Below are positions 4,219 through 31,895 of a stretch of 64,000 nucleotides of DNA, piece after piece. Each line of letters opens with the position of its first letter. Positions within the stretch are counted from its first letter, which is position 1. The position numbers and the translations under genes were made by a program. Origin of the DNA: Dimorphilus gyrociliatus (lineage: Eukaryota; Animalia; Annelida); contig CAJFCJ010000017.1 of NCBI GenBank assembly GCA_904063045.1, forward strand, positions 434,001-498,000, written 5' to 3'. The notes under the pieces were generated by a model. It had not been told where the DNA came from. It did not search any database and worked only from the letters and a program-made list of their open reading frames with translations.

Positions 4219-5691
<1,473 letters not shown>

Positions 5692-10700: not shown

Positions 10701-13700
10701 TAGAGACGGAAATCTTTTGAGTATTCAATACTGTTATCTCCTAATTTGATATAGTCGACACCCTGTTGTCTGAAAGTTAACTTCTGAAGAACAGGCTCAA
10801 GGATAGGATCCAATTCTTCACCAACATTTTCAATCAATACTGGTTGGCCAAAAGTGATAGCGTTCTCCAAAGTTCTAATATAATTTGCATCAGTTAACTT
10901 AACAACATTCAATTTATTTGATTTTTCCATATTTTTGACCCATTTATTAGCTTGACCTTGAGGATCAATCATCAATGGCCAACGCCTAGAATTAGCAACG
11001 ATGATACCATTCTCAACTGAGAAAGAATCTACTGGGAGACCAGCTATGTTCCAAGCTCGAATTTTAACGGGTTCTCCTAGAGTTGCATTTAATGAAAATA
11101 TTTCAGAGCATGGAATCTCTTTCTCGGTGCATATTTTATGCCAAATTGCCGTTTGTTCATTACGGAAGTCGACGGTAAACGCTCCTAAATAAGCAACAAC
11201 AGCTGAAGATAGTAAAACGTCTCCAGTGATGTTAATATATTTTTCTCCAAGTTCTTTGGCATTAGCCGTCCATCTGTCTTTTTCTCCGCCTAATCCACCA
11301 ATAAGCTTCTCGGCTCTTTCCAACTTTTTCGTACATAGATCAATATTTTCTTCAAGATCTTTCTTTTTCTGGGTCATTGCTTCAAATTCATCATTAAGAG
11401 CTTGAAGTTTGCTTGTTACTTCGTTCACTTGAGCTCTTTTTGCATTTAATTTATCCATTTGAACGGCTAGTTCGCTTTCGGCTTCGTCCAATTTGGCTTT
11501 TTTCGGAGCAACAACTCGAGCTATCCTGTCGTACGTATCCATAGCCTTTACCCATTTACAAAGACCTTCACAAGCAGTAGACGCAGATTTAATAACCGAC
11601 GGTTCAAAATCGGGATTGCTCGTATATTTATCTCTAATCTTTTTAATGATAGGAGGTGGAATATTATCTTTATCGTAGGTTTTAAGTCTATTAAGGAAAT
11701 TCAAGTCGCTTAGAAGACGTAGAGATGCTGCCCAGTAGTCTTCTATCATTTTACCGGAACCACCAGGATCAGGTTTCCTATCCGCTTTCATATTTAACAT
11801 AACGCAAATAGATTCCATAACAATTTTAACAATAGTCGGCGGATTCTATAAAAAGAATAAATAATATATATCACTAAGATTACTCCTAGTAATTAGAATA
11901 TTAAATATACCTTCATCGATTTAACTACAGTGATATCATTAGGTTTTAAGGTATTTAGGGCACTAATTGCAGCTTCTAAAGCTGGAATAGCTTCGGCTAA
12001 ATCACTTTCGCAATCGTCTTTTATGGCTTGAGCTGCTGCCGCTGCTTCGTTTGCGACAGCTTCATCAGCAGCAACAACCTCCTTCTTTGCTTCAACTTCA
12101 ACGGTATCTTGTTCGATTTTAACCATAAGTTTTTCAGTTTCAGCACTAGTTTTAATCAATTCAGGTTGAAGATCAGTCAATTCTTGTTGCATAACTTCAA
12201 CTTGAGAAGCTGCAAATTCCAATTTCTCCAAACCGGTTAAGTATCTATTAAAGGTGTATTAAAGTTAGGTTTTACTTAATCGTTATTATATTGATATTTC
12301 TATTATTTACCGATTTTTAAGGGTCATTATTTCGTTACGCTTTTGACCCAATAGTTTCTTAAAGGTCAGAATTAGTTCAAGATAGGAAGTGGGCGTTACA
12401 TAATTCATTCTTCGGAGAGTATCATAATATTTAAGCGATAATTGTCTAACGCTTTCGTGAAAGTATTTACACATCGATACACTCTCAGTCCTTATATTAT
12501 CTTCTAAATCAACTTCTTCAAGGAACTTATTAGCCACCATTTCTAAAGCATCCTCCGGCCAAGCCTAATAAAGAAGTTTATTGATGAAAGGTACAACGCT
12601 TAATCGATTATTGTCAATAAATATAAAACTCACTTGGAACCAATCAATAGTACAGCAATTAATTAATGATGGAAATTGTCTAAGTCTAGTTCTAAAAGCA
12701 TCTCCTATTGGTGACATAGCCAGAACGATATGTAAATTTTGCCTGACACGATCAATGAAGTAATTATACATAGCTAACGGTGTAGCTTCCACTTTCTTTC
12801 CCTAAAAGTATAATAATTGACCTATTTTATTATATTATTACTTTTTAACATATAATAATTATTAAATATAAATAGAAATATACAAGGATAGACAATTGAA
12901 TATACAAGCGGTAATTTACACATTTAAAGCGACATTATAAAACTCTAGAACTTCGTCTCTTGTATAATGTCTACAAAATAATAAACAAACAAATTTCATA
13001 TATATCTATATAGTTTAATAAAACATATAATATATATGAAATGCCATTAAAACTTATAAATACTATATTTTATTAATTTTTTCTCCATTTAAATAGGTCG
13101 GGAAAGGTGACGTCATTTCACAGTATAATTTATCTTAATACTGTATAACTGAACGATAAGGATAATCAAAATCTAAAACTATCATGCAATAAGAGGGTCA
13201 AATACAGTATATGGAACCTCCATCTCTTTGTTAACCATTTCGCTAAGTTGCTCCGCTGAAATACCTAGTTTCTTCTTTTTCTTCTCTAATTCTTCTTGTA
13301 TCCTTATCATCTTATTTATGGATAATTTTTATAAGGTGTAGAAAAAAAACAAACAAATTGGATATTGTAGTTACATTAATTCAGTGTTCGATAAAAGGGA
13401 AGCTAAGGGATTTTGTATGATAAGAATTAATTATTTTTTATCTATTTTGTTTAGGTTATTAATTATTTATTTATAATCTAAAATTTAGGTCATTTAGTTG
13501 AAGGCTAAAACAGGGGGCGTGTCCTTAATCAAGTTCAATTTCATTTTATAAATTAAGGAATATATATATACTGTATATAAGATAAATTTTGAACTTACCT
13601 CGTTTCTCGCTACTGTTTGCATCTTTTCTATAATTTCCGCTTTTTCGTCCGATGCGTAAAGATTCGGCACATCTCCAGTATTTAGAATCATACTAATATC

Positions 13701-16700
13701 CTCCATGAATGATTCATTCTTTATTTGATTGTCAGAGAAAAGGAAGACAATTTGTTTACCTTCTGTACCAGCTTTCAACAATAGCTGAATGAAGAATAAT
13801 AATGAAAGTAATAGATTATAATTAGTATCTAATACACATATATAAAATACAAACTCTTTTGATATCATCTCTCCAATCGCTAATAGAGTAATTTTTTGTT
13901 ATTTCTATCTGGAAGAGGTCGTAATCTGCCATAAATGTTGCTAATTTTGTAGCACTTTGTCTTCCACTACCGCCAATACCTAAAGAGTAATTTAAATGTA
14001 AGATACTTGGAAAGTGTGATTATTCGAATAGTTGAATCTACCAGCTAAGAGGGCGTGTCCATTGTCCTGCAATAATACTCTACTAACTCTTGACACATGT
14101 TCAATAGCAAACTTGAACATGACCAAAGACATTGGAGCTTTGGATAGCTGGTTGTATTCACTAAGATAGTGTTCAATAGTTGATGTTAATTCTTTTAAAT
14201 CTGTAACTTCGTCATAGACTTTTGGTCCTTGATCTGGATTCATGTAATCTCCGAATAGTAACGATCTAATGTGTTCGTCTGTAACTTTTCCGCTTAGTGT
14301 CAAATGTCCAAGTATTTTATCAATGCTTTGTTTATAAGAATCCTGACAAACTTCTCTTACGACACTATATTTTTAATGGAAAATTGATTATATATAATGT
14401 ATATATAGGCAAATAAGCCATATAATAACGCATTACTTGAAAAAGGTTTCTCGGTCAGTATCGTCAATTAAACGATCGTAGAAGACTCTATATACTTCGT
14501 GTATCCAAAGTCTTAGTAGTTTGTCCGGTTCCTGCATCTTTGAAGATGGTACTAAAAGGACGCCCCTAATAACTCTTGAGAAATCTCGAAGGTTGAATAC
14601 GTAATGTGACTTTGTTGGCGTTGGTAAAAATCTAACGATTGTTTGTTTATAAACATTCATCGTCGCTTGAACCATAAGCTAAAAAATAGAGTACAAAAAT
14701 ATATTATTAAGTTTAATTATTGTTGGAAATCACAGTAAAAGCGTCTAATAATCAATAACATACTTTTCCCAATCGATTAAAAGCTTGATCGAATCCTTTA
14801 GCAAAATGCCAGTCTGAAATTGTTGTAAATATTCTACTCATAGTATTATCGTCAAATTCATCAATGGAAACAATCTGTAAATGACGAGTAAATCTTGATG
14901 TTATGTCGTTTCGTCCTCCTCCAGGTGGTCCCATAGCCGCGACAAACAACTATGAAAGAAACGGGTAAACTTAATGATAATACATCTATAGGCTATCGTC
15001 TTACATTATCAACTATGAATAACTTGGAAGTATCTTTCCTATCGTACCAATGACCATGATTTATCCATTGACGTAGTAGCTCAATTGGTGGTTGTGCACC
15101 ATATTTCTCTTTAGCTGGCATATTTAAGTCGTCAACAAAAACGACACATTTCTTGCCCAATGGAGGTCCATAAACGCCTTTTCGACGCCTAAATAGAGGG
15201 GAGGAGAGGGGGAAAGTTAATAAACATTATAAAAATCCTCTATACACCATAAGATTATTTATAGGAAAGTTAGTAAATGGTTATAGGTTGATAAGTTTAA
15301 AAATGTTAATATACTCTTAATAAATATTGAATGAATATAATAGAATATCTTAAAACGGCATTAGCATCATTCTAACTAATTGATTGACGCGTAATTTTCA
15401 TGCTGGAAGGAGGAAGGGAATGGAAGCGAAAAAAAAAAAACAAAAGATAAATCTACTTTGGATTCTTTATTATGGATTCAACAACATTAAAAATTATACC
15501 GTAGTTTACGATCACGTGAATCGTGATCTTGAATTAGAATGCCAGTGCGCCTGATTTGAACAATTTCGATAAAAAACAAATCATAACAACAGACTCTTTT
15601 CTTTACTTTTTTAATTTTGTATATCATTCCTTATTCATTGCTAATTAAATAGTTAGAGAGTGATTAACTAGAATATCATTCCATACACAAGCAGAATTGA
15701 TCATTGATTTTGACGTATAAATATGCAAATTAACTAGCAGGTACTTACTTATCAATTATTTATGATAAATAGAATATGAAGAAGGTTTTTGCTTACCTAT
15801 CAAGTTTACTCATTATAATATCCTGAGTTTGATTAGCGCTGGTTCGAGCAGAAAAGTTTACGCAATTTGGTATATATCTTATAAGAAAATGACAAGGATT
15901 AGACGTACTATATATAAAGTTATGAATATTCATTATATATAACTTACTGATCTTTTGGTAATTTAATAAGATAGCTGTTTGTGATAGCCGATTTACCAGT
16001 TCCGGTTGGACCAACGAATAAAACTGGGACCTCATGCATCAAATATGTAGTTAGAAAGAAGGACTGTCTAGCTGTTTCACTAGTAGGAATAATAAGGTCG
16101 CTGACCTAAAATTGTGGAAAAGAATAAAATTAAAAACCAATAGGTAAACCTTTAATATCATTTAAATAATTAGTTAATTAAAAGAGAAACTAATAAATTG
16201 TAATTAGATATTTGAATATTTTAACTAGAAAAATTTAGAAGTTATTTAAAGATTAATTAAATCAAAATAAAGAACTAAATAACTTTTATCAGGTTAATTA
16301 ATAAATGAAATATTAAAATTAAAAAAAAAGGTAACAGATTAAGATGCTTATGCAAACCTGTAACGGATCAAAAAAGTGCTGTATATATATATATAATAAG
16401 TGCAATTTTTTTTTAAAAAAACAAAAAATAACAAAAAAAATAATAAAAATAACAAAAACTTGTGTTCAATCTTTCAAAATTTGTTTGAATATGATTCTTT
16501 TAATAGATAAATGTTAAAATTTTACCTTTGCATTTGCCGCTAATTCTGTACTTTCTTTATCAATTGTTTCCATCCAATCAATCCAACCTCCGCTTCCTTT
16601 CTTTAGGAAGCAGAAATCGTAGACGCTTGATCTTTCTGGGAAAGCGTTACTCTAGAAAATTAGAAATATATATATATGTATATATATATATTTACATTAA

Positions 16701-17767
16701 ACATAAAAAAAGGATCGATACCTTTGTAATCTTGGATGATTTTGGTTTTGGATGATTAGAATTAGCTCCAGATATTAAATCTCTGAAGAAAACGTCGAAT
16801 TTTTTACGACTTTCTCCAGTTATTGTACCACCAACAGTCCAAACAAGTGAGAAAAGGAATAAACCTTGTAACCATAGCATAATCTGTTAAAATAAGATAG
16901 AAATAATGATAATAAGGATGATATTCTTATAATAAATAATAATATTCGAAATATCCTTCTGAAATGAATAAGAAAATAATGAAATATTAAAATTCTATAG
17001 ATATTTGTTTTAGTAAAAACATAATATTTAAGTAAGTAAAAACAACTTGAAATACGATAAATAAATAGAATAATAGTGCTATGACAAATTTTGTGGATGC
17101 ATACATTATTACGTAATACATTAATATTATGCAATAGTTTATACAATATATCTTTTTATGCAAGTGATATTAATAGTTCTTATTGTTATTTGGCATTCAT
17201 ATTTACAAGAAAAAAAAATATTGCGCAGCCAATAAACAAGGTGTTCGCTTTAAGCAAATTCATCTCAATAACTTTTAAGATAACATTCATGCAGTACCTG
17301 TTGATGACCCTGTATCGGGTCATTGTCAAGATCGAGTTCGCTATCCTATTATTTGCATATTGCATATTTGGTCAAGATGCAGGTTTGTTTGTTTTTTTTT
17401 GTTTGGTTTGGTTACGTTTTTGTTCGGAATTGTTTGTTTTTTGGGGAAGGAGGAAAAAAATAGGTCATTTCATTAGTTCTCACCGTAAATAGTAACTTTT
17501 GATTATTAAAGGTTCAATTAAAATTGGCATCCGCCTCACCTGATCCTCGGTAGACGGAGCCCTATAAAGGAATTGGAGCTTCTTTCCATACTATAAGTTA
17601 GAGTAGATTTTATCAATATTAATAAATTTTAATAGGCTTAAAATATAACTTATTCTTACAGTATGTTTACCTGTTTATAAATCAAACGTGCGTAATTAAC
17701 ACTTTTAACTTCTTCATCTTTTCCCTCATTCCTATCAGAATTTTCTTCAAGGGTAACGCCTAGACGC

Positions 17768-17801
<34 letters not shown>

Positions 17802-20800
17802 GATATAGATATATTTAATCAAGACTTTGTTATCTAATCTTTATATTCTATTCTAATTTTTCCCATTTAATAATTATTCATCTAGCTATTGAACTTTAAA
17901 ATACCTTTTGCTGTTGAACTGCCTTTTGAGTATCACTTTTCCGTCTACCTTTCTTTTTAAACTTGACATTTTTCCAGTGTGACTAATAACGAATGAAAAC
18001 TAGAGTTTTTCTCTTGGTCTTTGGGAGGGGAAGGGGAACATTTTTTTTTTAAAAAAAAAACTACTAACAAAAATTTTATCTCTATAAAAACTCTATTAAT
18101 TGGAAGAAAAAGCTTTAAAAATGTTAATATTTTTCTCTTCCAAGAGAAAAAGATTGCTTTTTTTCCTCATCAGAAAAAAAGACTTATGAAAAATTTCATG
18201 ATTGATTATATTTTTTTTATAAAATGGATACGTAACCAGCGAATATACCTGCGCAGGCGCATGCGTCTGTTGATTATTGCTATGATTATGATGATCTTTT
18301 TTCTTATTATGTTTCTTTTTCCGTTTTTTCGAATCCTTATGAATATCGATGCGAGAATCGGTTTTTTGAAGAAGCTAAATAATTCGTAGTTTTAACAGAT
18401 TTCGTTAAAATAATAAAATATGAATAGATGTTTTAATAAACGTGCCGAATGTCATATTTTGTTTAGTTATGTGTTGTTGTTGTTTTTTTTTGTTCACTTG
18501 TACAACGAGGACTCTTACCTGCTGCTTATTCGGAACCTCAATTTTACCATCAGGGTTTGACTAATACACAGTATTGAGTTATTTTTGGTAAGATATATAC
18601 AGTATATATATATATATATAGATAAATAAGAGATGAACAATACTAATTTTGCTGACTAAAACGAGTCCTACCTGCTGATTGGATAATTCCTTTCCTTCGG
18701 TTGCGCTGTCTCTTACTTCGTCTAATAAGCAGGTAAGTAGCCTTTGTAGAGTAAATACGAGGTGTATAGGAGAGGTATTTATAAGCATTTTGCAATTGTG
18801 CTGTATAAAATGCAAACAAGGATCTATTAACCAATCGAACATATCATTTAGCATTTCTTTATGATCTTCGCTCAAAGTATTAGGTAGTTCGTGCAACATA
18901 TAACTCTCTTTGAAAGGTTTCCAACCGAGTTGATGAGGTTCCAAGTAAATCATACCGCAACGTGATACAGTAGCAGGTGAAGCCTGCTCCAAGTCGGCAG
19001 GTTCAAAAATAAGATTCATTGAATTACTCATTTGAATAATTTCACCGGACATTAAGCACAGTTTTTTATTATCGTCCAGTACTGTGTTCATATTTTCAAT
19101 CCAGACCGCATCCACTGGACCATCGAATAAAATCCATTTTCTATCATCACTTGGATTACTTGCATATTCTCTGAAAGTATTAGCTAAAACTCCATCGGAC
19201 CATTCGTGGGATACGGGATCAAATTGACCATATAATTGCCCCATTGTTATAGATTTTGGGTTAATAATTCTATAAAAGACTTTGAATTCTTCCATTAGTC
19301 CTGATTCGTGTAAATCGCCTAAAGCATCAGCTAGAACCTGATAAGCGCTGGTCTTACCACCCATAGGTTCTCCAACAATCATCAGACCGTGTCTGACAAG
19401 AATCATTTCGTATACTTGAATAATCTTGTCAATGAACCACGGAACTTGTTGTAATTTTCTCTTGGCTATGTTATCTTTCAACGCTTCTAAGAAGACGCCT
19501 AAATCTGGTTTAACCAATTCGACACCAGGGAACAAATCGCTGATAATACCTTCAAAAAGAGGTACATCTTGAGCCAAGAATTTTGGCAAGTTAACGTCCA
19601 TAATAGCTTTAAGTAGTAATTCTGGTTCTTGTGTATCAGGGTGTTTTAATTTCAAGTTTCCAGCCGCAGTTAAAACACTCTTAACGGCTCTCATACCGTA
19701 ATCGTAGTGATGTTGTGAACTTAGCTGTTCTGAGCATAATCTATACGTAGCGACAATCTTCTGAGAGAGACTTCTAGCATCGACAAATCCCATAGAATAT
19801 AAGGATATTTCACCGATAAGAGCATAATCGGGTACCATCATAGCAACCGTACGGAAAAGAACTTTCAAGTTATCTGGCAATTCCTGTCTACCCGCATATC
19901 CAGGATTCATAGTAATAAACATAGTACAGGTTGGATTAAGAGATAGTTCAGTACCTTCAAAATTGAACTTCTTTTCACCACTGTTAATAGCCTGTTGAAT
20001 ACACTGGATCTGTTGAGCAACAACGGATAATACTTCTAATTCAATTCTATTAAATTCATCAAAACAGGCCCATGCTCCAGCTTGGGCTAAACCCTTGAAA
20101 AACTTTCCCATGGCTTTGTAATCCAAACCATCGCTGCAGTTGAAAACAACGCACTGTTTAGCAACCGCCTTCGCTAAATCTTTACTGGTTTCCGTTTTTC
20201 CAGTTCCGGCGGGTCCTTCGGGCGCTCCGCCAAGGTTTAGTTTAAGCGCACCCATAAGAGTTCTATAGCAACGATCCGTCAACGGTGTTATAACCAAACG
20301 TCCAGAGTTACCAAGGTATTCGTAACCGTATCTTAGTTCTGTTGTAATCATTCTTACCGATACATGCTTTTCTATCCAATAGTATCGTAACTGTGCCAAC
20401 CAGTCGAAATCATTAGCACTAGTTACATTTTTCTTGGCCATGGCCTCTACAACGTCTCTTGCGTGAACGTCTATGACGATAAGAGCTCCGAGAGTTATTC
20501 TTGCACCACTTTCGAGTTTTCCTCTCACTAATTCAACAGTTTCCTCTATTTGTTTATTACTCTTTTGTAAATAGTCATCTAAGCCTTTACTGTCTTTCAT
20601 CGATTCAGTAACTTCAGCAGTCCAGAAAATAGAACTAACACAAATTACAACTTGACCAGGCCATTCAAGTACCCATTTGTTTCTTGCTGTTGTCTTATAA
20701 CCATCTATTGATTTTGATATGACATTCCTTACGGATGATAACATGACATCTTCTACTTGTAAAAGCCATTTTTCAACCATACCTTTGGCTCTGGCGGGAA

Positions 20801-23800
20801 CAATTTTTTGTGTCAGTTCTACAGTTTCCTTTTCGGATGAAATCATCCCAACAATTTCCTGTTGTTCAGTAAATTCCAATTTAGCGATACCTTCAAAGCA
20901 CTTTTTCAAGTGTGGTTGAACTCGAAGAGGATCTTTTGTCTCAGATAAAATTTCTAAAAGTTCATCATTTGATAAGAAAAAGAAACGAGGGAAATAGAGA
21001 CGTTTCTTTTCTAGATAAGCGTTTAATCCTTTTTGAATTTCGTCCAAAAGGACGTTAGCCTCTTGTAGGCGTTTAAGCATATTGGGTTGGTCAGTCGCCT
21101 TTGAAAAGATAAATTGAATAATTGCTAAACAACAACGTAAAAATATTATTAATTATTACCTTTAAACAATGATTATCCTTAGAAGCTTCTGACATAATAT
21201 CCTTCCAAGTTGCATCAACTATACCAAACTTTCTCCCCTCCTCAGGCATTTGAGCCATAATATCTTCAGAGCTGAAAATTGGCTCCAAGTATAGCCAAGT
21301 AGCTTGAACCTTTAGCCACGCATCAATAATATCTTGCATAGACACTAATTTCTCAGTCCATTCTTTCATTTCAGCTTCGAATGGTTTAATGAAAGGGGAT
21401 CCTTGCATAGTTTGAGCTTTAATAATATGATCGTCCAAAACGACTTGAATATCATCAATTGCGGATAAGATTTTAATACCCTAAAAAGTTGATAGAAAGA
21501 AGAATATGAACAAAAGGAGGAGAGGTATAACCAAAACAATCATAAAAAAACAATGCATTTTAATAATAAGTCATATTCAGCTATTTATTTTCGACACTGA
21601 CGCTGATTGTTTTACATGTAATTCATATTTTTAAAAGGAGGGAAGTGTGCTATATATAGATATATACATTAAAATACTTTTAAATATACAACGACATTAA
21701 TCTCACCTCATAGTCAGGTAACTAAAAATATATGAAATATCACTAGTTAGTGAAAAGAAAACAAGTTCATGCGCGTTAATAATTTCATGCAGAAAGATAT
21801 GAAGAAGATAAGGAAGAGATATCAGAGGATAATTCCTAATCTTTTCTTCCTTTGAAGAAGATTTTCTTTTGTTTTTTGCCATGTTTTTTTTTAAAGAGTA
21901 TTTAAACATAAAAAGAAAGAAAATAAGCTAAGCTTGTTTGGATTAGTCAGAAAACTTGGATGAGAATTAGGACACGAACCATACGGATCTAAGTTAACCT
22001 AATCCTTATTTAACCCCTATCCAAGTTCGATTTACTCTTACACTCCCTTTCTTTAGCCTTAAACCAACAGGACCCTAACCGTTAATCCTTAAATTTCATC
22101 CGAGTTTTCTTACACTCCAGTTTATGTTTTTTGTTTGTCATTTAATGAAAAAAGAGTCAAAACAAAAAGACTTGTCTATCATATCAGTTCAATTAAAAAC
22201 TTGAAATACTAACCGTTTCTCTATATGGTACAAATTCAAAGTTCAAGTCTGTCCATTCCACTTTCATCTTCTTTAGATTCTTCTCTAAAGAGAATTCCTT
22301 ACTTGCAGCACCGCTTATTTCCTCTAATTTATCTAAGCATTTGCTTAAACCTAATTCAAGCATATTTGATAATGTAGCCTGTTCTCCTGGCTTAATATCC
22401 ATCTCCATAATATCACTCATTTGGGCCCAATGTCTATCTCTTATTCCTGGATTGCATATAACAGCCAAGATGGGTAGATTTTGCTTGAATTTGTCAATTT
22501 TAGCTTTGTAGACATTGGCTACTCTTTGAGGACCGGCCTGATCTTGGAAAGATTTATTCAATTTGAACAAAGTTCTATACATGTCTTGAACTTCTGATTC
22601 AATATCTTCAGCATTAAGTTGTTTAAACGGACCTAAAAGGGAATTGGTTCATTATTGTATATACATATAAATAATTTGTTAAACTTTTACCATTGAGCCA
22701 TTCTTCTTGCTTTTTATGGAAGAGATAGGTTGTATTCCATAGCTTTTCGTATGGTTCTTTTGCCTTGACCATAGCTGGTAATTGGATATATTCAGTTTGT
22801 TCCCATCCTAATAATTCTTCTTCCGTATTCACTTGTTCCATCTCTAATTTAGCAGCATCAAGATTTTCTTGTAACTTTGCCAAAGCATCTACATTGTTTC
22901 TCATCTCGTCAACGCTCATAATCTGTATTTAATAAACATGTAAAAAAAAAAAAGAAACAGGAAAACTGACGTAGAGATTATCTAATTAGCATATTAATTA
23001 ATAAGTTAGTTAATTAATCAAGTATATATATATATCTTTCCGATCATTAAATATCTAAATAAGAAGTTAATGTGATAGAAAGAAAGAAAAAAAAGATAAA
23101 TCTTTGCGGCCATTTTTAATTCTTGTTAGCGTTATTTATGAATTTGATATGAATGAATATATAGTATTTAAATAATAGTATAATCAAATATTCTGTGAAG
23201 AATATAAAATAATTGATTTAACCTCTCCGTATCGATTTATTGATAGCTGAAACAAAAAATTATCGCATCCACTTTCTTATTATTATGATTATTATTAAAG
23301 AAAAATACAAAACTGTAGTTACTATTTATGCACTCAAATTAAACAAACACAACCAGGTCGGTTCTAAATTTAATGGCCAAAATAAAAGAAAGAAACGTAC
23401 CTCTTTCTTCTTATACGATTCAACTTCTTTATGATATTCTTCTAATTTAGCTTCGAATGCTCTCCTCTTACGGCGAACTTCATCTTCAACTTGATCTCTT
23501 CTATTCATAAGACGATTTGTTGCCGTTTCGAATGTATTAAGAATTCTTTGTGGCCATTGAAACAATTGACTATTCAATTTTATATCTTCATCTATTCAAT
23601 TAATTAACATATAGTTATATTACTAACAAAATTATAAGTTATACTTGGCATAAAAGCGTAATCTAAAAGGAAACTAAGCCTATAGACAGCTTCATTGATT
23701 TCTTTTTTAAGTTCGTGGACAGTTTTATCCATACTCTGAAAAGATAATTAACATAAGATCAAGTTAAATATACAGGTGAATAAAATTTAAATAGATAAAC

Positions 23801-30250: not shown

Positions 30251-31895
30251 ATGCTTCTATCTAACATATGCCTAGTATCCAACATTATATTTTTGGCTTT
30301 TTATCCAAGCAATGGTGCTAGTCTAAAGAAAGTTATTGTTGTGAGTTAATAAATTTCCATATTTGTCAGGGCTCTATAGGTCCCAAATAGTTCTAAGCTC
30401 AATTTCCTTCCTAGGTGTTTAGACATGGGGATCGTAGCCCTATTGGAACGTATAAGAATGATCCATATATAACGGAAGAGTATTGGCCACAAGGATTGCT
30501 ACAATTAACTCAAGTTAGTAATTTCTAAATAAACAAAAACTTTATATATTAATAATAATATACCATTATATAATATAATATCATACTATTCCAAGTATAA
30601 ACACACATATTAAAGACGTTTACTTTCACACAGAAAGGAATGTATCAAGAATACAATCTTGGGAAGTTTCTGAAGAAACGATACATGATGAACGAAAACC
30701 TATTGAACTCTACGTACAAGAAAAGTGAGGTATAGGAAAAAATTTTAATATTTGACATTCACAAACTGATTATATTAAATATTTGTCTGAATAGATCTTT
30801 GTAGAAAGTACTGATACGGATCGTACGTTAATGTCTGCACAAAGCGTTTTGAATGGCCTTTATCCACCAGTTGGAAATCAAATATGGCGTAAGGGTCTAG
30901 ATTGGCAACCCATACCCGTTCATACAACAACGTATGATTTGATATTAGGAGATTATGAGTGTAAAGCATTAGCAGATGCTATTAGTGAGACTAGAAAGTC
31001 GAAAAATTTTACAGAAACAACTAAAATGTATAAGGTAGAATTTCATAGACAATTGGTATTTTGTTATACAGTTTATTGATTTATTTATCCTTTATAATTA
31101 GAAATTTATCAACAAAATTAACACCAACACTGGAGAGAACTATAAAACGATTGAAGATATTTCTCCCTTTTGTGATAATGCTTTTTGTAATGTAAGTTCT
31201 CATTCTCCTTTAATTTCTTTTTAGTATATTTTAATATGTTAATCATATTTAAAAATTAGAGTCAACATAACAACACGCTTAAGTGGCTGAGTCACGAAGA
31301 ACTTGAAAAATGTACAGATTTTGTTCCAGCTTACGACGGTTGGTTTCAAAGAGGTTCTGAAAAGAAGGCAAAGTATGGTTTGGGATTTTTTTTCGCCAAC
31401 ATGTCTGAACTCTTTCACAATGCTAAAGATCATAAAATTCAAAGAAAGTTAACTTTATTCTCTGCTCATGACACAACTATTATTTCATTTTTCTATGGTT
31501 TGGGTGCGAAATTCGTAGCTCAACCAACTTATTCCTCTGCTGTTATGACTGAATTATGGCAGGACAAAAATGAATGGCAAATTAAATTAGCTTATAGGAC
31601 TTTGTCAAAAGACGGCAAGGAAATAGTTAAACCTGTAAAGGTTAAAGGTTGCAGCAATAGTGAATTTTGTTCATTCGACGAATTTATGAAAATAATAGAT
31701 AAAGTAAAGCTTACCAGAGATGAATATAACGACGCTTGTGTGGAAACAGAGGTGAAGAAATTGTCGGTAGCAACTATTATAGCTATTGTTGCTTCAATCA
31801 TTATTTGTTTACTAGCATCATTTTTAGTCCTATCATGGCTAAGAAGGAAATCTTCTCCTACCCCGTTTTATACTGCAATTCATAGAGGCAGTTAA
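30251..31895 (+). CDS. Lysosomal/prostatic-type histidine acid phosphatase (multi-exon)
   Basis: Signal peptide, RHGDRSP motif, [11 protein letters not shown], catalytic HD in SAHDTT, C-terminal TM helix and YTAI (YxxPhi) sorting motif; ACP2-like. Confidence 0.9.

What the first reader, a model, noticed from the sequence alone, without database searches (positions are those of the whole stretch)
17298..18560. Tandem array of six in-frame cassette exons in one 1.8-kb intron at the AAA2 lid loop of DNAH3
Seen, in transcript order: [14 protein letters not shown] (18560-18519), [42 protein letters not shown] (18374-18249, with an internal AACAG that could give an 18-nt THAPAQ version), [26 protein letters not shown] (17982-17905), [32 protein letters not shown] (17766-17671), [17 protein letters not shown] (17590-17540, preceded by ctaacttatag) and [16 protein letters not shown] (17345-17298). 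Together they are 441 nt/147 aa, all phase 0, donors gtaaga/gtatat/gtattt/gtaaac/gtgagg/gtactg. The last has two TGC motifs just upstream of its AG and TGCATG (RBFOX motif) at +5 of its donor. A weaker 12-nt LLFT candidate lies at 17495-17484. Inference: modules of opposite charge (basic versus acidic) inserted combinatorially or mutually exclusively into a surface loop of the AAA ring could tune binding to tubulin tails or partners. Caveat: the terminal Gln is partly forced by the CAG|GT consensus.
Basis: partly seen in the sequence, partly recalled or inferred. Interest (0 to 1): 0.85.

Follow-up and report, generated by a model that had tools for sequence, protein, structure and literature searches.

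The report
Six conserved hidden exons in dynein
One long intron of a ciliary motor gene (DNAH3) in the tiny worm Dimorphilus gyrociliatus holds six small in-frame exons that the public gene models leave out but a diverged relative has kept codon for codon, so the motor probably exists in versions with an optional charged insert.

Summary
All six AG..GT segments sit at the stated coordinates, are open in phase 0, and total 441 nt / 147 aa.

The window is Dimorphilus gyrociliatus. The gene is its DNAH3 orthologue (DgyrCDS10811-13). All three annotated isoforms join 18672 directly to 16883, so the six exons are unannotated.

Single-sequence statistics were mixed. The donors are the strongest in the intron, and an exon-like filter gave 5-6 hits against 0.1-1.5 expected. 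But the acceptors lack pyrimidine tracts.

The decisive evidence is comparative. Two Logan genomic contigs from a diverged relative (control exons dS about 2) carry all six segments. Each has identical length, AG/GT kept and an open frame. Pooled identity is 81.6% and dN/dS is 0.17. The spacers between them are at shuffle-level identity and differ in length.

The same gene has three annotated in-frame micro-cassettes, and the two that I scored also have weak acceptors.

Best reading: real, conserved, alternatively included coding exons that insert a basic-then-acidic segment into a variable loop of the AAA2 lid. Inclusion in RNA was not shown here.

Not supported: mutually exclusive use, and the 12-nt LLFT exon. 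The UGCAUG after exon 6 is conserved.

The scan had earlier flagged cassette exons in this genome's dyneins, including this gene's long introns.

The parts
18672..21098 (-). Upstream constitutive exon (809 codons) covering AAA1, AAA2 and the first half of the AAA2 lid. It ends ...[17 protein letters not shown], residue 1924 of DgyrCDS10813.
   Evidence: ORF and translation; 100% identity to P0390; Pfam AAA_5 and Dynein_AAA_lid positions 1-56.
16884..18671 (-). Host intron, 1788 nt, phase 0, the longest in the gene. The median intron of this genome is 66 bp.
   Evidence: Spliced alignment; direct junction in all annotated isoforms; intron-size context from PMC7854359.
18519..18560 (-). Exon c1, 42 nt, [14 protein letters not shown]. 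It has the best donor in the intron and essentially no acceptor signal. Its donor flank resembles the constitutive donor at 18671.
   Evidence: The orthologue in L004 (5354-5395) is 40/42 identical with AG/GT kept.
18249..18374 (-). Exon c2, 126 nt, 42 aa, net charge about +8 (Lys-rich).
   Evidence: It has the only acceptor-like AG within 300 nt upstream of its donor, and that AG is frame-compatible. L004 5540-5665: 112/126 identical, same length, open, charge kept.
17905..17982 (-). Exon c3, 78 nt, 26 aa, net charge about +9.
   Evidence: L004 6081-6158: 60/78 identical, 9 synonymous and 6 non-synonymous codon changes. The relative has a pyrimidine tract directly upstream.
17671..17766 (-). 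Exon c4, 96 nt, 32 aa. The C-terminal half, [17 protein letters not shown], is conserved.
   Evidence: frame 0 is the best codon frame. L004 6293-6388: 69/96 identical, same length, CAG acceptor.
17540..17590 (-). Exon c5, 51 nt, [17 protein letters not shown].
   Evidence: L004 6466-6516: 43/51 identical. There are 5 synonymous changes and 2 conservative replacements, and nearly all differences fall at third codon positions.
17298..17345 (-). Exon c6, 48 nt, [16 protein letters not shown], net charge about -5.
   Evidence: L004 6731-6778: 36/48 identical, with 5 synonymous and 5 non-synonymous codon changes, 4 of them conservative. It remains acidic.
17288..17293 (-). TGCATG at +5..+10 of the c6 donor, inside a conserved stretch: gta[c/t]tgcatgaatgtt.
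   Evidence: An RBFOX-type enhancer reading is inference.
17372..17386 (-). Conserved intronic block AAACCTGCATCTTGA, about 30-40 nt upstream of c6. It may be a branch-site or regulatory element.
   Evidence: Alignment columns about 1490-1506.
17241..17256 (-). Conserved intronic block TGCTTAAAGCGAACAC downstream of c6.
   Evidence: 16/16 identical (columns about 1631-1646).
17484..17495 (-). It is not conserved as an exon. Only the donor-like ACGGTGAG block after it is conserved.
16722..16883 (-). Downstream constitutive exon, [15 protein letters not shown]... It starts at residue 1925 of DgyrCDS10813 and covers the second half of the AAA2 lid.
   Evidence: Pfam Dynein_AAA_lid positions 62-105.

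Best explanation
The 1788-nt intron of the Dimorphilus gyrociliatus DNAH3 orthologue contains six real protein-coding exons under purifying selection that the public annotation omits.

The default splice joins 18672 to 16883. That gives the canonical AAA2 lid found in every other dynein.

In some transcripts one or more of the six phase-0 exons are included. They then add up to 147 residues to a variable loop in the middle of the AAA2 lid domain. The insert is a neutral start, two strongly basic modules, a mixed module, a short module and an acidic end.

Strong donors paired with acceptors that lack pyrimidine tracts suggest inclusion is not constitutive and needs activators. The conserved UGCAUG just after exon 6, and other conserved intronic blocks, are candidate enhancers.

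Shown here:
- the exons exist;
- their length, frame and splice sites are conserved;
- their substitutions show a coding signature;
- skipping is annotated.

Inferred: inclusion in RNA, which cells use it, whether use is combinatorial, and what the insert does.
For: Identity and annotation:
- The window exons are 100% identical to DgyrCDS10813. The direct junction lies at residues 1924|1925 in all three annotated isoforms.

The relative, L004/L005 (Logan SRR23372228/9):
- Control exons are 84.6% identical, with dN 0.016 and dS about 2.
- All six candidates have orthologues of exactly the same length, with AG and GT kept and no stop.
- Per-exon identities are .95, .89, .77, .72, .84 and .75, pooled 81.6%.
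- Codon comparison gives 84 identical, 29 synonymous and 34 non-synonymous. NG86 gives dN .127 and dS .765.
- By my hand calculation from those numbers, about 39 synonymous-site differences occur where about 15 are expected if sites were equivalent (chi-square about 48).
- Spacer cores are at or near shuffle-level identity and differ in length: 266 vs 415 nt and 414 vs 519 nt.
- An independent MAFFT alignment shows the same six conserved islands.

Within the window:
- The candidate donors rank 1, 3, 6, 4, 2 and 10 of the 67 GT in the intron.
- 8 of the 10 strongest donors end an open frame of at least 14 codons that starts at a TAG.
- The exon-like filter gives 5-6 hits against 0.1-1.5 expected.
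- GC is 0.39 in the six exons against 0.24 in the rest of the intron.

Precedent in the same gene:
- Three in-frame micro-cassettes are annotated as alternative. The two that I scored have equally weak acceptors, 1.4 and -2.9.

The site tolerates variation:
- Loop length ranges from -13 to +42 aa among 140 homologues.
Against: - No transcript containing any of the six exons was seen. The three public isoforms all skip them.
- No homologue outside this lineage has an insert here. That includes full-length transcripts and genomes at 72-74% identity and about 250 other dyneins.
- The acceptors are background-like. The pyrimidine fraction is .35-.75 against .72 +/- .10 for the 22 real acceptors.
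- Stronger acceptors lie near c3 and c5. They would give a stop-containing exon and a 22-nt exon respectively.
- Frame 0 is the best codon-usage frame in only 2 of 6 exons. Lys/Asn/Gln-rich composition may explain this.
- dS in the six exons (.77) is lower than in control exons. Part of the conservation may therefore act at the RNA level.
- The relative's species is unidentified.
Confidence: 0.8

Rival explanations
1. The six blocks are conserved non-coding elements, for example intronic enhancers or splicing-control elements of a long intron, and are never translated. Their open frames would be incidental.
For: The genome paper reports ATAC-seq peaks enriched in unusually long introns. Other non-exonic blocks in the same intron are also conserved. 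The acceptors are weak. dS is reduced relative to control exons.
Against: All six keep exact length, AG/GT borders and open frames across a divergence that has saturated the spacers. Differences concentrate at synonymous sites, about 39 observed against about 15 expected, giving dN/dS 0.17. Replacements are mostly conservative and the charge pattern is kept.
Confidence: 0.08
2. The six exons are constitutive and the public models are wrong at this locus, so the real protein always carries the 147-aa insert.
For: The exons are conserved and under coding selection. With them, the intron breaks into pieces of 80-414 nt, closer to the genome's short-intron norm.
Against: - Three independently annotated isoforms differ at other cassettes, yet all use the direct junction.
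- Five of the six acceptors fall at or below the weakest of the gene's 22 constitutive acceptors.
- The direct junction reproduces the gap-free lid of all homologues.
Confidence: 0.08
3. These are chance pseudo-exons. An AT-rich intron yields many open AG..GT segments, and the reader picked the protein-like ones.
For: The intron has 11 non-overlapping open segments, which is typical. Every 'acceptor' is simply the in-frame TAG that bounds the open frame. K-rich translations are common in this genome's non-coding DNA.
Against: The exon-like filter gives P 4e-3 to 1e-7. All six are conserved in the relative while the unchosen open segments lie in unalignable spacer.
Confidence: 0.02
4. The blocks are relics of local duplications of the exon end plus donor and are no longer used.
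For: The c1 donor flank and peptide resemble the constitutive exon end: AAnCAGCAG|GTAnGA..CTCGTT, with p about 0.008 against other strong donors.
Against: Only c1 shows this. The other five have no similarity to the exon end or to each other. Relics would not stay open with a low dN/dS.
Confidence: 0.02

Closest known systems
The annotated micro-cassettes of the same gene (isoforms DgyrCDS10811/10812/10813): ELSINRYG, HFFDPLQ and [17 protein letters not shown]
   Same: Same gene and species. They are small, frame-preserving exons lying alone in the gene's long introns and optional between isoforms. The two that I scored have weak acceptors. The 51-nt one is conserved in the same relative.
   Different: They are single exons that are already annotated. 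The six here form a tandem array in one intron, are unannotated, and together add 147 residues.
CD44 variable-exon array (v1-v10). Recalled from general knowledge, not tested here.
   Same: A tandem run of non-homologous, frame-compatible cassette exons inside one intron-spanning region. They can be included in combinations to lengthen a surface segment.
   Different: CD44 is a vertebrate adhesion receptor and its insert lies in an extracellular stalk, with inclusion proven by RNA and protein. Here the host is the ATPase ring of a dynein motor and inclusion is still inferred.
Three-way mutually exclusive exon cluster in DNAH12 of the same genome (earlier finding s1-080344)
   Same: Alternative splicing inside the motor domain of an inner-arm dynein of D. 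gyrociliatus.
   Different: Those exons are homologous copies used one at a time, so they substitute for each other. The six here are unrelated in sequence and length, so they add an insertion.
RBFOX-activated cassette exons with downstream UGCAUG. Recalled from general knowledge.
   Same: UGCAUG lies within 10 nt downstream of the c6 donor and is conserved in the relative.
   Different: Only one of the six exons has the motif. No binding or expression data exist for this animal.

Membership tests
Cassette (skipped) exon | An AG..GT-bounded segment inside an intron of the host gene, on the sense strand | tested here: met
   for all six.
Cassette (skipped) exon | Frame-preserving when included: length divisible by 3 and no stop in the host phase | tested here: met
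   The host intron is phase 0. The same holds in the relative.
Cassette (skipped) exon | A skipping isoform exists | tested here: met
   All three public isoforms join residues 1924|1925 directly. I did not inspect the RNA basis of those models.
Cassette (skipped) exon | An inclusion isoform is observed in RNA or protein | not testable with these tools
No transcript contigs of this species were reachable.
Cassette (skipped) exon | Exon and splice sites conserved in relatives, with a coding substitution pattern | tested here: met
   L004/L005: identical lengths, AG/GT kept, dN/dS 0.17, spacers saturated.
Cassette (skipped) exon | Recognisable 3' splice signal (pyrimidine tract or branch site) | tested here: inconclusive
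   The pyrimidine fraction is .35-.75 against .72 +/- .10 for constitutive acceptors. Two annotated cassettes of the same gene score equally low.
Mutually exclusive exon cluster | Member exons are homologous and of similar length | tested here: not met
   No pairwise similarity among c1-c6. Lengths range from 42 to 126 nt.
DNAH3 orthologue (single-headed inner-arm dynein heavy chain) | Closest to DNAH3 among solved dyneins, with the full dynein motor architecture | tested here: met
   8j07_g3 DNAH3 scores E 4.5e-118 against DNAH7 at 1e-94. Named full-length animal hits are mostly 'DNAH3-like', and P0390 has the full domain set. UniProt auto-names it DNAH7.
RBFOX-dependent exon | UGCAUG in the proximal downstream intron, conserved | tested here: met
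   c6 only.
RBFOX-dependent exon | Dependence on an RBFOX protein | not testable with these tools
   No expression or binding data.
Recursive-splicing site | An acceptor immediately followed by a donor (AG|GT) | tested here: not met
   None of the six acceptors is followed by GT.

The most novel reading that the evidence does not exclude
An inner-arm dynein carries a conserved, regulated module in the lid of its second ATPase domain. Six independently selectable exons could give up to 64 isoforms. They would graft a basic-to-acidic disordered arm of up to 147 residues onto the motor ring in particular ciliated cell types. Candidates are the sparsely sampled dwarf male or its sperm, or specific ciliary bands. 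The arm would change how this dynein docks to neighbours or to tubulin tails.
Probability: 0.3. Interest if true: 0.8.

Novelty: new member of a known kind. Interest (0 to 1): 0.6.

Why it matters
Dynein motor domains are usually treated as invariant machines whose diversity comes from gene duplication.

Here one gene shows at least nine optional in-frame exons. Three are annotated and the six here are conserved. One further conserved candidate lies at 13310-13218. The six sit together inside an ATPase-ring domain.

If inclusion is confirmed, a genetically tractable miniature annelid offers a natural experiment on how a charged disordered insert on AAA2 affects an axonemal motor.

It would also show that RNA-seq-based annotation of this compact genome misses conserved, probably cell-type-restricted exons.

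Practically, the finding shows that long introns in a short-intron genome are good places to look for hidden exons. It also shows that one diverged relative is enough to tell real exons from pseudo-exons.

Tried and rejected
**Chance.**
- Counting open AG..GT segments, dinucleotide shuffles and window-wide nulls at first made the array look ordinary.
- I rejected this after the exon-like filter and the comparative data.

**Repeats or transposons.** Only (TA)n matches elsewhere in the window.

**A nested or antisense gene.** The + strand ORFs of 122-135 aa are T-rich junk with no family match.

**A parent gene or paralogue for the peptides.** There is no Pfam hit and no significant tblastn hit in the window.

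**Serial duplication of the exon end.** This is supported only for c1.

**Conservation in distant relatives.**
- L001 is a transcript at 74% identity. L002 and L003 are genomic. None has an insert.
- A 12-residue match of c4 in L001 is out of frame and is chance.

**Codon-frame test.** It spoke against typical coding in 4 of 6 exons. I now read this as an effect of extreme composition.

**Finding same-species transcripts.**
- Searches in three length classes failed.
- The annotated protein was reached only by profiling a full-length homologue together with window exons.
- Exact look-up of that protein returned no contig.

**Literature.**
- One full-text search for cassette exons in axonemal dynein heavy chains found nothing on such exons.
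- Searches for the run accessions did not identify the relative.

**Recursive splicing.** Rejected, because no acceptor is followed directly by GT.
Full report
**What is there**

The minus strand from about 26.9 kb to 7.77 kb encodes an axonemal dynein heavy chain.
- An 809-codon exon (21098-18672) carries AAA1 and AAA2 and ends ...[17 protein letters not shown].
- The next constitutive exon starts at 16883 with [15 protein letters not shown].
- Between them lies a 1788-nt phase-0 intron.

Each is bounded by AG and GT, has a length divisible by 3 and is open. Together they total 441 nt / 147 aa.

The best solved-structure match of the upstream exon is human DNAH3, 8j07_g3, with E 4.5e-118. DNAH7 scores 1e-94.

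Pfam places the junction inside the Dynein_AAA_lid domain, between profile positions 56 and 62. The label 'AAA2 lid loop of DNAH3' is therefore right.

**Single-sequence tests: a mixed picture**

A bare count of open AG..GT segments is unremarkable.
- The intron has 11 non-overlapping segments of at least 14 codons.
- All 1788-nt windows of the 64 kb average 8.8 +/- 2.7.
- The antisense strand has as many long ORFs as the sense strand.
- Every proposed acceptor AG is simply the in-frame TAG that bounds its ORF.

I built position weight matrices from 22 mapped introns of the gene.

Donors:
- The candidate donors rank 1, 3, 6, 4, 2 and 10 of the 67 GT in the intron.
- Five of them are CAGGT. The intron holds 5 CAGGT on this strand, where the window-wide density predicts about 0.75.

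Acceptors:
- Their scores are -6.2 to 2.7, against a leave-one-out median of 7.3 for real sites.
- The upstream pyrimidine fraction is .35-.75, against .72 +/- .10 for real sites and .45 for any AG.
- c3 and c5 have much stronger acceptors nearby. Those would give a stop-containing exon and a 22-nt exon.

Composition and codon usage:
- The six segments have GC 0.39, like coding sequence. The rest of the intron has GC 0.24.
- Their codon log-odds is 0.34 per codon. Real exons score 0.44 +/- 0.10 and decoys -0.09 +/- 0.35.
- Frame 0 is the best frame in only 2 of 6.

An objective exon-like filter required an open frame, a donor score and non-negative codon log-odds.
- It found 5-6 modules in the intron against 0.1-1.5 expected, under every threshold combination.
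- The null was the antisense of the gene plus the rest of the window, real exons included (P 4e-3 to 1e-7).
- Block shuffles gave 0.09 expected.
- 8 of the 10 strongest donors end a TAG-bounded ORF of at least 14 codons. The figure is 18.5% for all positions in the intron and about 5% elsewhere.

At that stage the array was clearly non-random. Its status as exons was still open.

**Distant relatives**

The direct junction aligns without a gap to fragments and full-length dyneins from many phyla. It also does so to a 13-kb transcript contig at 74% identity (L001).

Two compact genomic loci at 72-73% identity have no insert either (L002, L003).

Across 140 homologues the loop length varies from -13 to +42 residues, mostly within +/-5. 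None of about 250 later homologues exceeds +37. The site is variable, but a 147-residue insert is lineage-specific.

**Identity of the gene and its annotation**

I then profiled a full-length homologue together with window exons, so that full-length proteins fell within the search's length range.

This returned DgyrCDS10813 (4102 aa), which is 100% identical to the flanking exons. ELSNQQ ends at residue 1924 and IMLWLQ starts at residue 1925.

Its 90% cluster holds three annotated isoforms of 4094, 4102 and 4104 aa. All three use the direct junction.

The isoforms differ by three other small in-frame cassettes:
- ELSINRYG, window 23246-23223;
- HFFDPLQ, window 16378-16358;
- [17 protein letters not shown], window 15550-15500.

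Two conclusions follow.
- This gene does use optional micro-exons hidden in its long introns.
- The two cassettes that I scored have acceptors as weak as those of the six candidates, 1.4 and -2.9. The weak-acceptor argument therefore loses most of its force.

The annotation's RNA came from embryos, juvenile females and adult females. Male or sperm isoforms are thus poorly sampled.

**The decisive comparison**

The same protein cluster contains a Logan-derived 967-aa ORF. It lies on two unspliced genomic contigs, L004 (SRR23372228) and L005 (SRR23372229).

These come from a diverged relative.
- Control exons are 84.6% identical at the nucleotide level.
- They show 194 identical, 144 synonymous and 10 non-synonymous codons.
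- NG86 gives dN 0.016 and dS about 2.

In the homologous intron (2048 nt in L004) every one of the six candidates has an orthologue of exactly the same length, preceded by AG, followed by GT and free of stops.

| Exon | Identical nt |
|---|---|
| c1 | 40/42 |
| c2 | 112/126 |
| c3 | 60/78 |
| c4 | 69/96 |
| c5 | 43/51 |
| c6 | 36/48 |

Pooled, that is 360/441 identical nt. Codons split into 84 identical, 29 synonymous and 34 non-synonymous. NG86 gives dN 0.127 and dS 0.765, a ratio of 0.17.

From those figures I calculate by hand about 39 synonymous-site and about 42 non-synonymous-site differences. If sites were equivalent, about 15 and about 66 would be expected (chi-square about 48).

Replacements are largely conservative (I/V, L/M, D/E, K/R). 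The charge pattern is kept: c2 about +8, c3 about +9 and c6 about -5 to -6 in both lineages.

The seven spacers behave differently.
- Their lengths differ: 111/104, 144/144, 266/415, 138/134, 80/77, 194/214 and 414/519 nt.
- Their cores align at .46-.69 identity, against .45-.64 for shuffled sequence.
- An independent MAFFT alignment of the two introns shows the same six islands.
- It also shows a few short conserved non-exonic blocks. These include the stretch gta[c/t]TGCATGaatgtt right after c6 and the block TGCTTAAAGCGAACAC.

The 12-nt LLFT candidate has no AG and no equivalent exon in the relative. Only the donor-like ACGGTGAG after it is conserved.

**Interpretation**

Length, frame and splice dinucleotides are preserved, and changes are mostly synonymous, across a divergence that has erased the surrounding intron. 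That pattern is the signature of translated exons.

All public isoforms skip them, and their acceptors are far weaker than the gene's constitutive ones. The most economical reading is alternative, activator-dependent inclusion.

Compared with the motor core, dS is lower and dN is about eightfold higher. That fits what is generally reported for alternative exons encoding disordered surface segments. This comparison rests on general knowledge and was not tested here.

c1 may descend from a duplication of the constitutive exon end. Its donor flank and its peptide, S..[D/E]GK...N.QQ, resemble that end.

The six exons are not homologous to each other. A mutually exclusive scheme is therefore not indicated, and an additive insert is.

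What the insert does is unknown, including any tuning of contacts with tubulin tails or neighbouring complexes.

**Limits**
- I could not reach any RNA data for this locus.
- The relative's species is unidentified.
- The synonymous/non-synonymous chi-square is a hand calculation.
- The PWMs rest on only 22 introns.

**Verdict**

The regulatory and functional details remain hypotheses.

Noticed in passing
window 13218-13310 (-), in intron 13598..12802: Another unannotated in-frame open segment, [31 protein letters not shown]. It is conserved in the relative (L004 10829-10921, 74/93 identical, AG and GT kept, [31 protein letters not shown]). It is probably a seventh hidden cassette exon of the same gene.
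   Followed up: partly
window 23223-23246, 16358-16378 and 15500-15550 (-): The three public isoforms (DgyrCDS10811/12/13) differ exactly by these small in-frame cassettes: ELSINRYG, HFFDPLQ and [17 protein letters not shown]. The 51-nt one splits the LDRRRKG motif of AAA3 and is 85% conserved in L004.
   Followed up: partly
window 18500-18526 vs 18657-18680 (-): The donor region of c1 (AAGCAGCAG|GTAAGAGTCCTCGTTGTA) resembles the constitutive donor (AATCAGCAG|GTAGGACTCGTTTTA), and the two peptides end alike. This suggests an old tandem duplication of the exon end.
   Followed up: partly
window 17091-17122, 17241-17256, 17372-17386 and about 17470-17487 (-): Short non-exonic blocks of the intron are conserved in the relative amid saturated spacer. 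One is a donor-like ACGGTGAG and one is TATGCATCC. They are candidate splicing-control elements.
   Followed up: no
window 17768-17818 and 18593-18628: (TA)n microsatellites lie directly upstream of c4 and c1. The same repeat recurs at many places in the window (for example 24038, 39152, 44170 and 45668). It is absent from the relative's intron.
   Followed up: no
window 5491-5643 (-) and 30415-30729 (+): The exon-like filter also picked up exons of neighbouring genes. One is an actin-like first coding exon ([42 protein letters not shown]). The other two are exons with a histidine-acid-phosphatase-like RHGDRSP motif.
   Followed up: no
PDB entry 9fqr chain Xx: The top solved-structure hit is a 4069-residue dynein heavy chain whose molecule name reads 'putative malate dehydrogenase 1B'. 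This looks like a labelling slip in the deposited entry.
   Followed up: no
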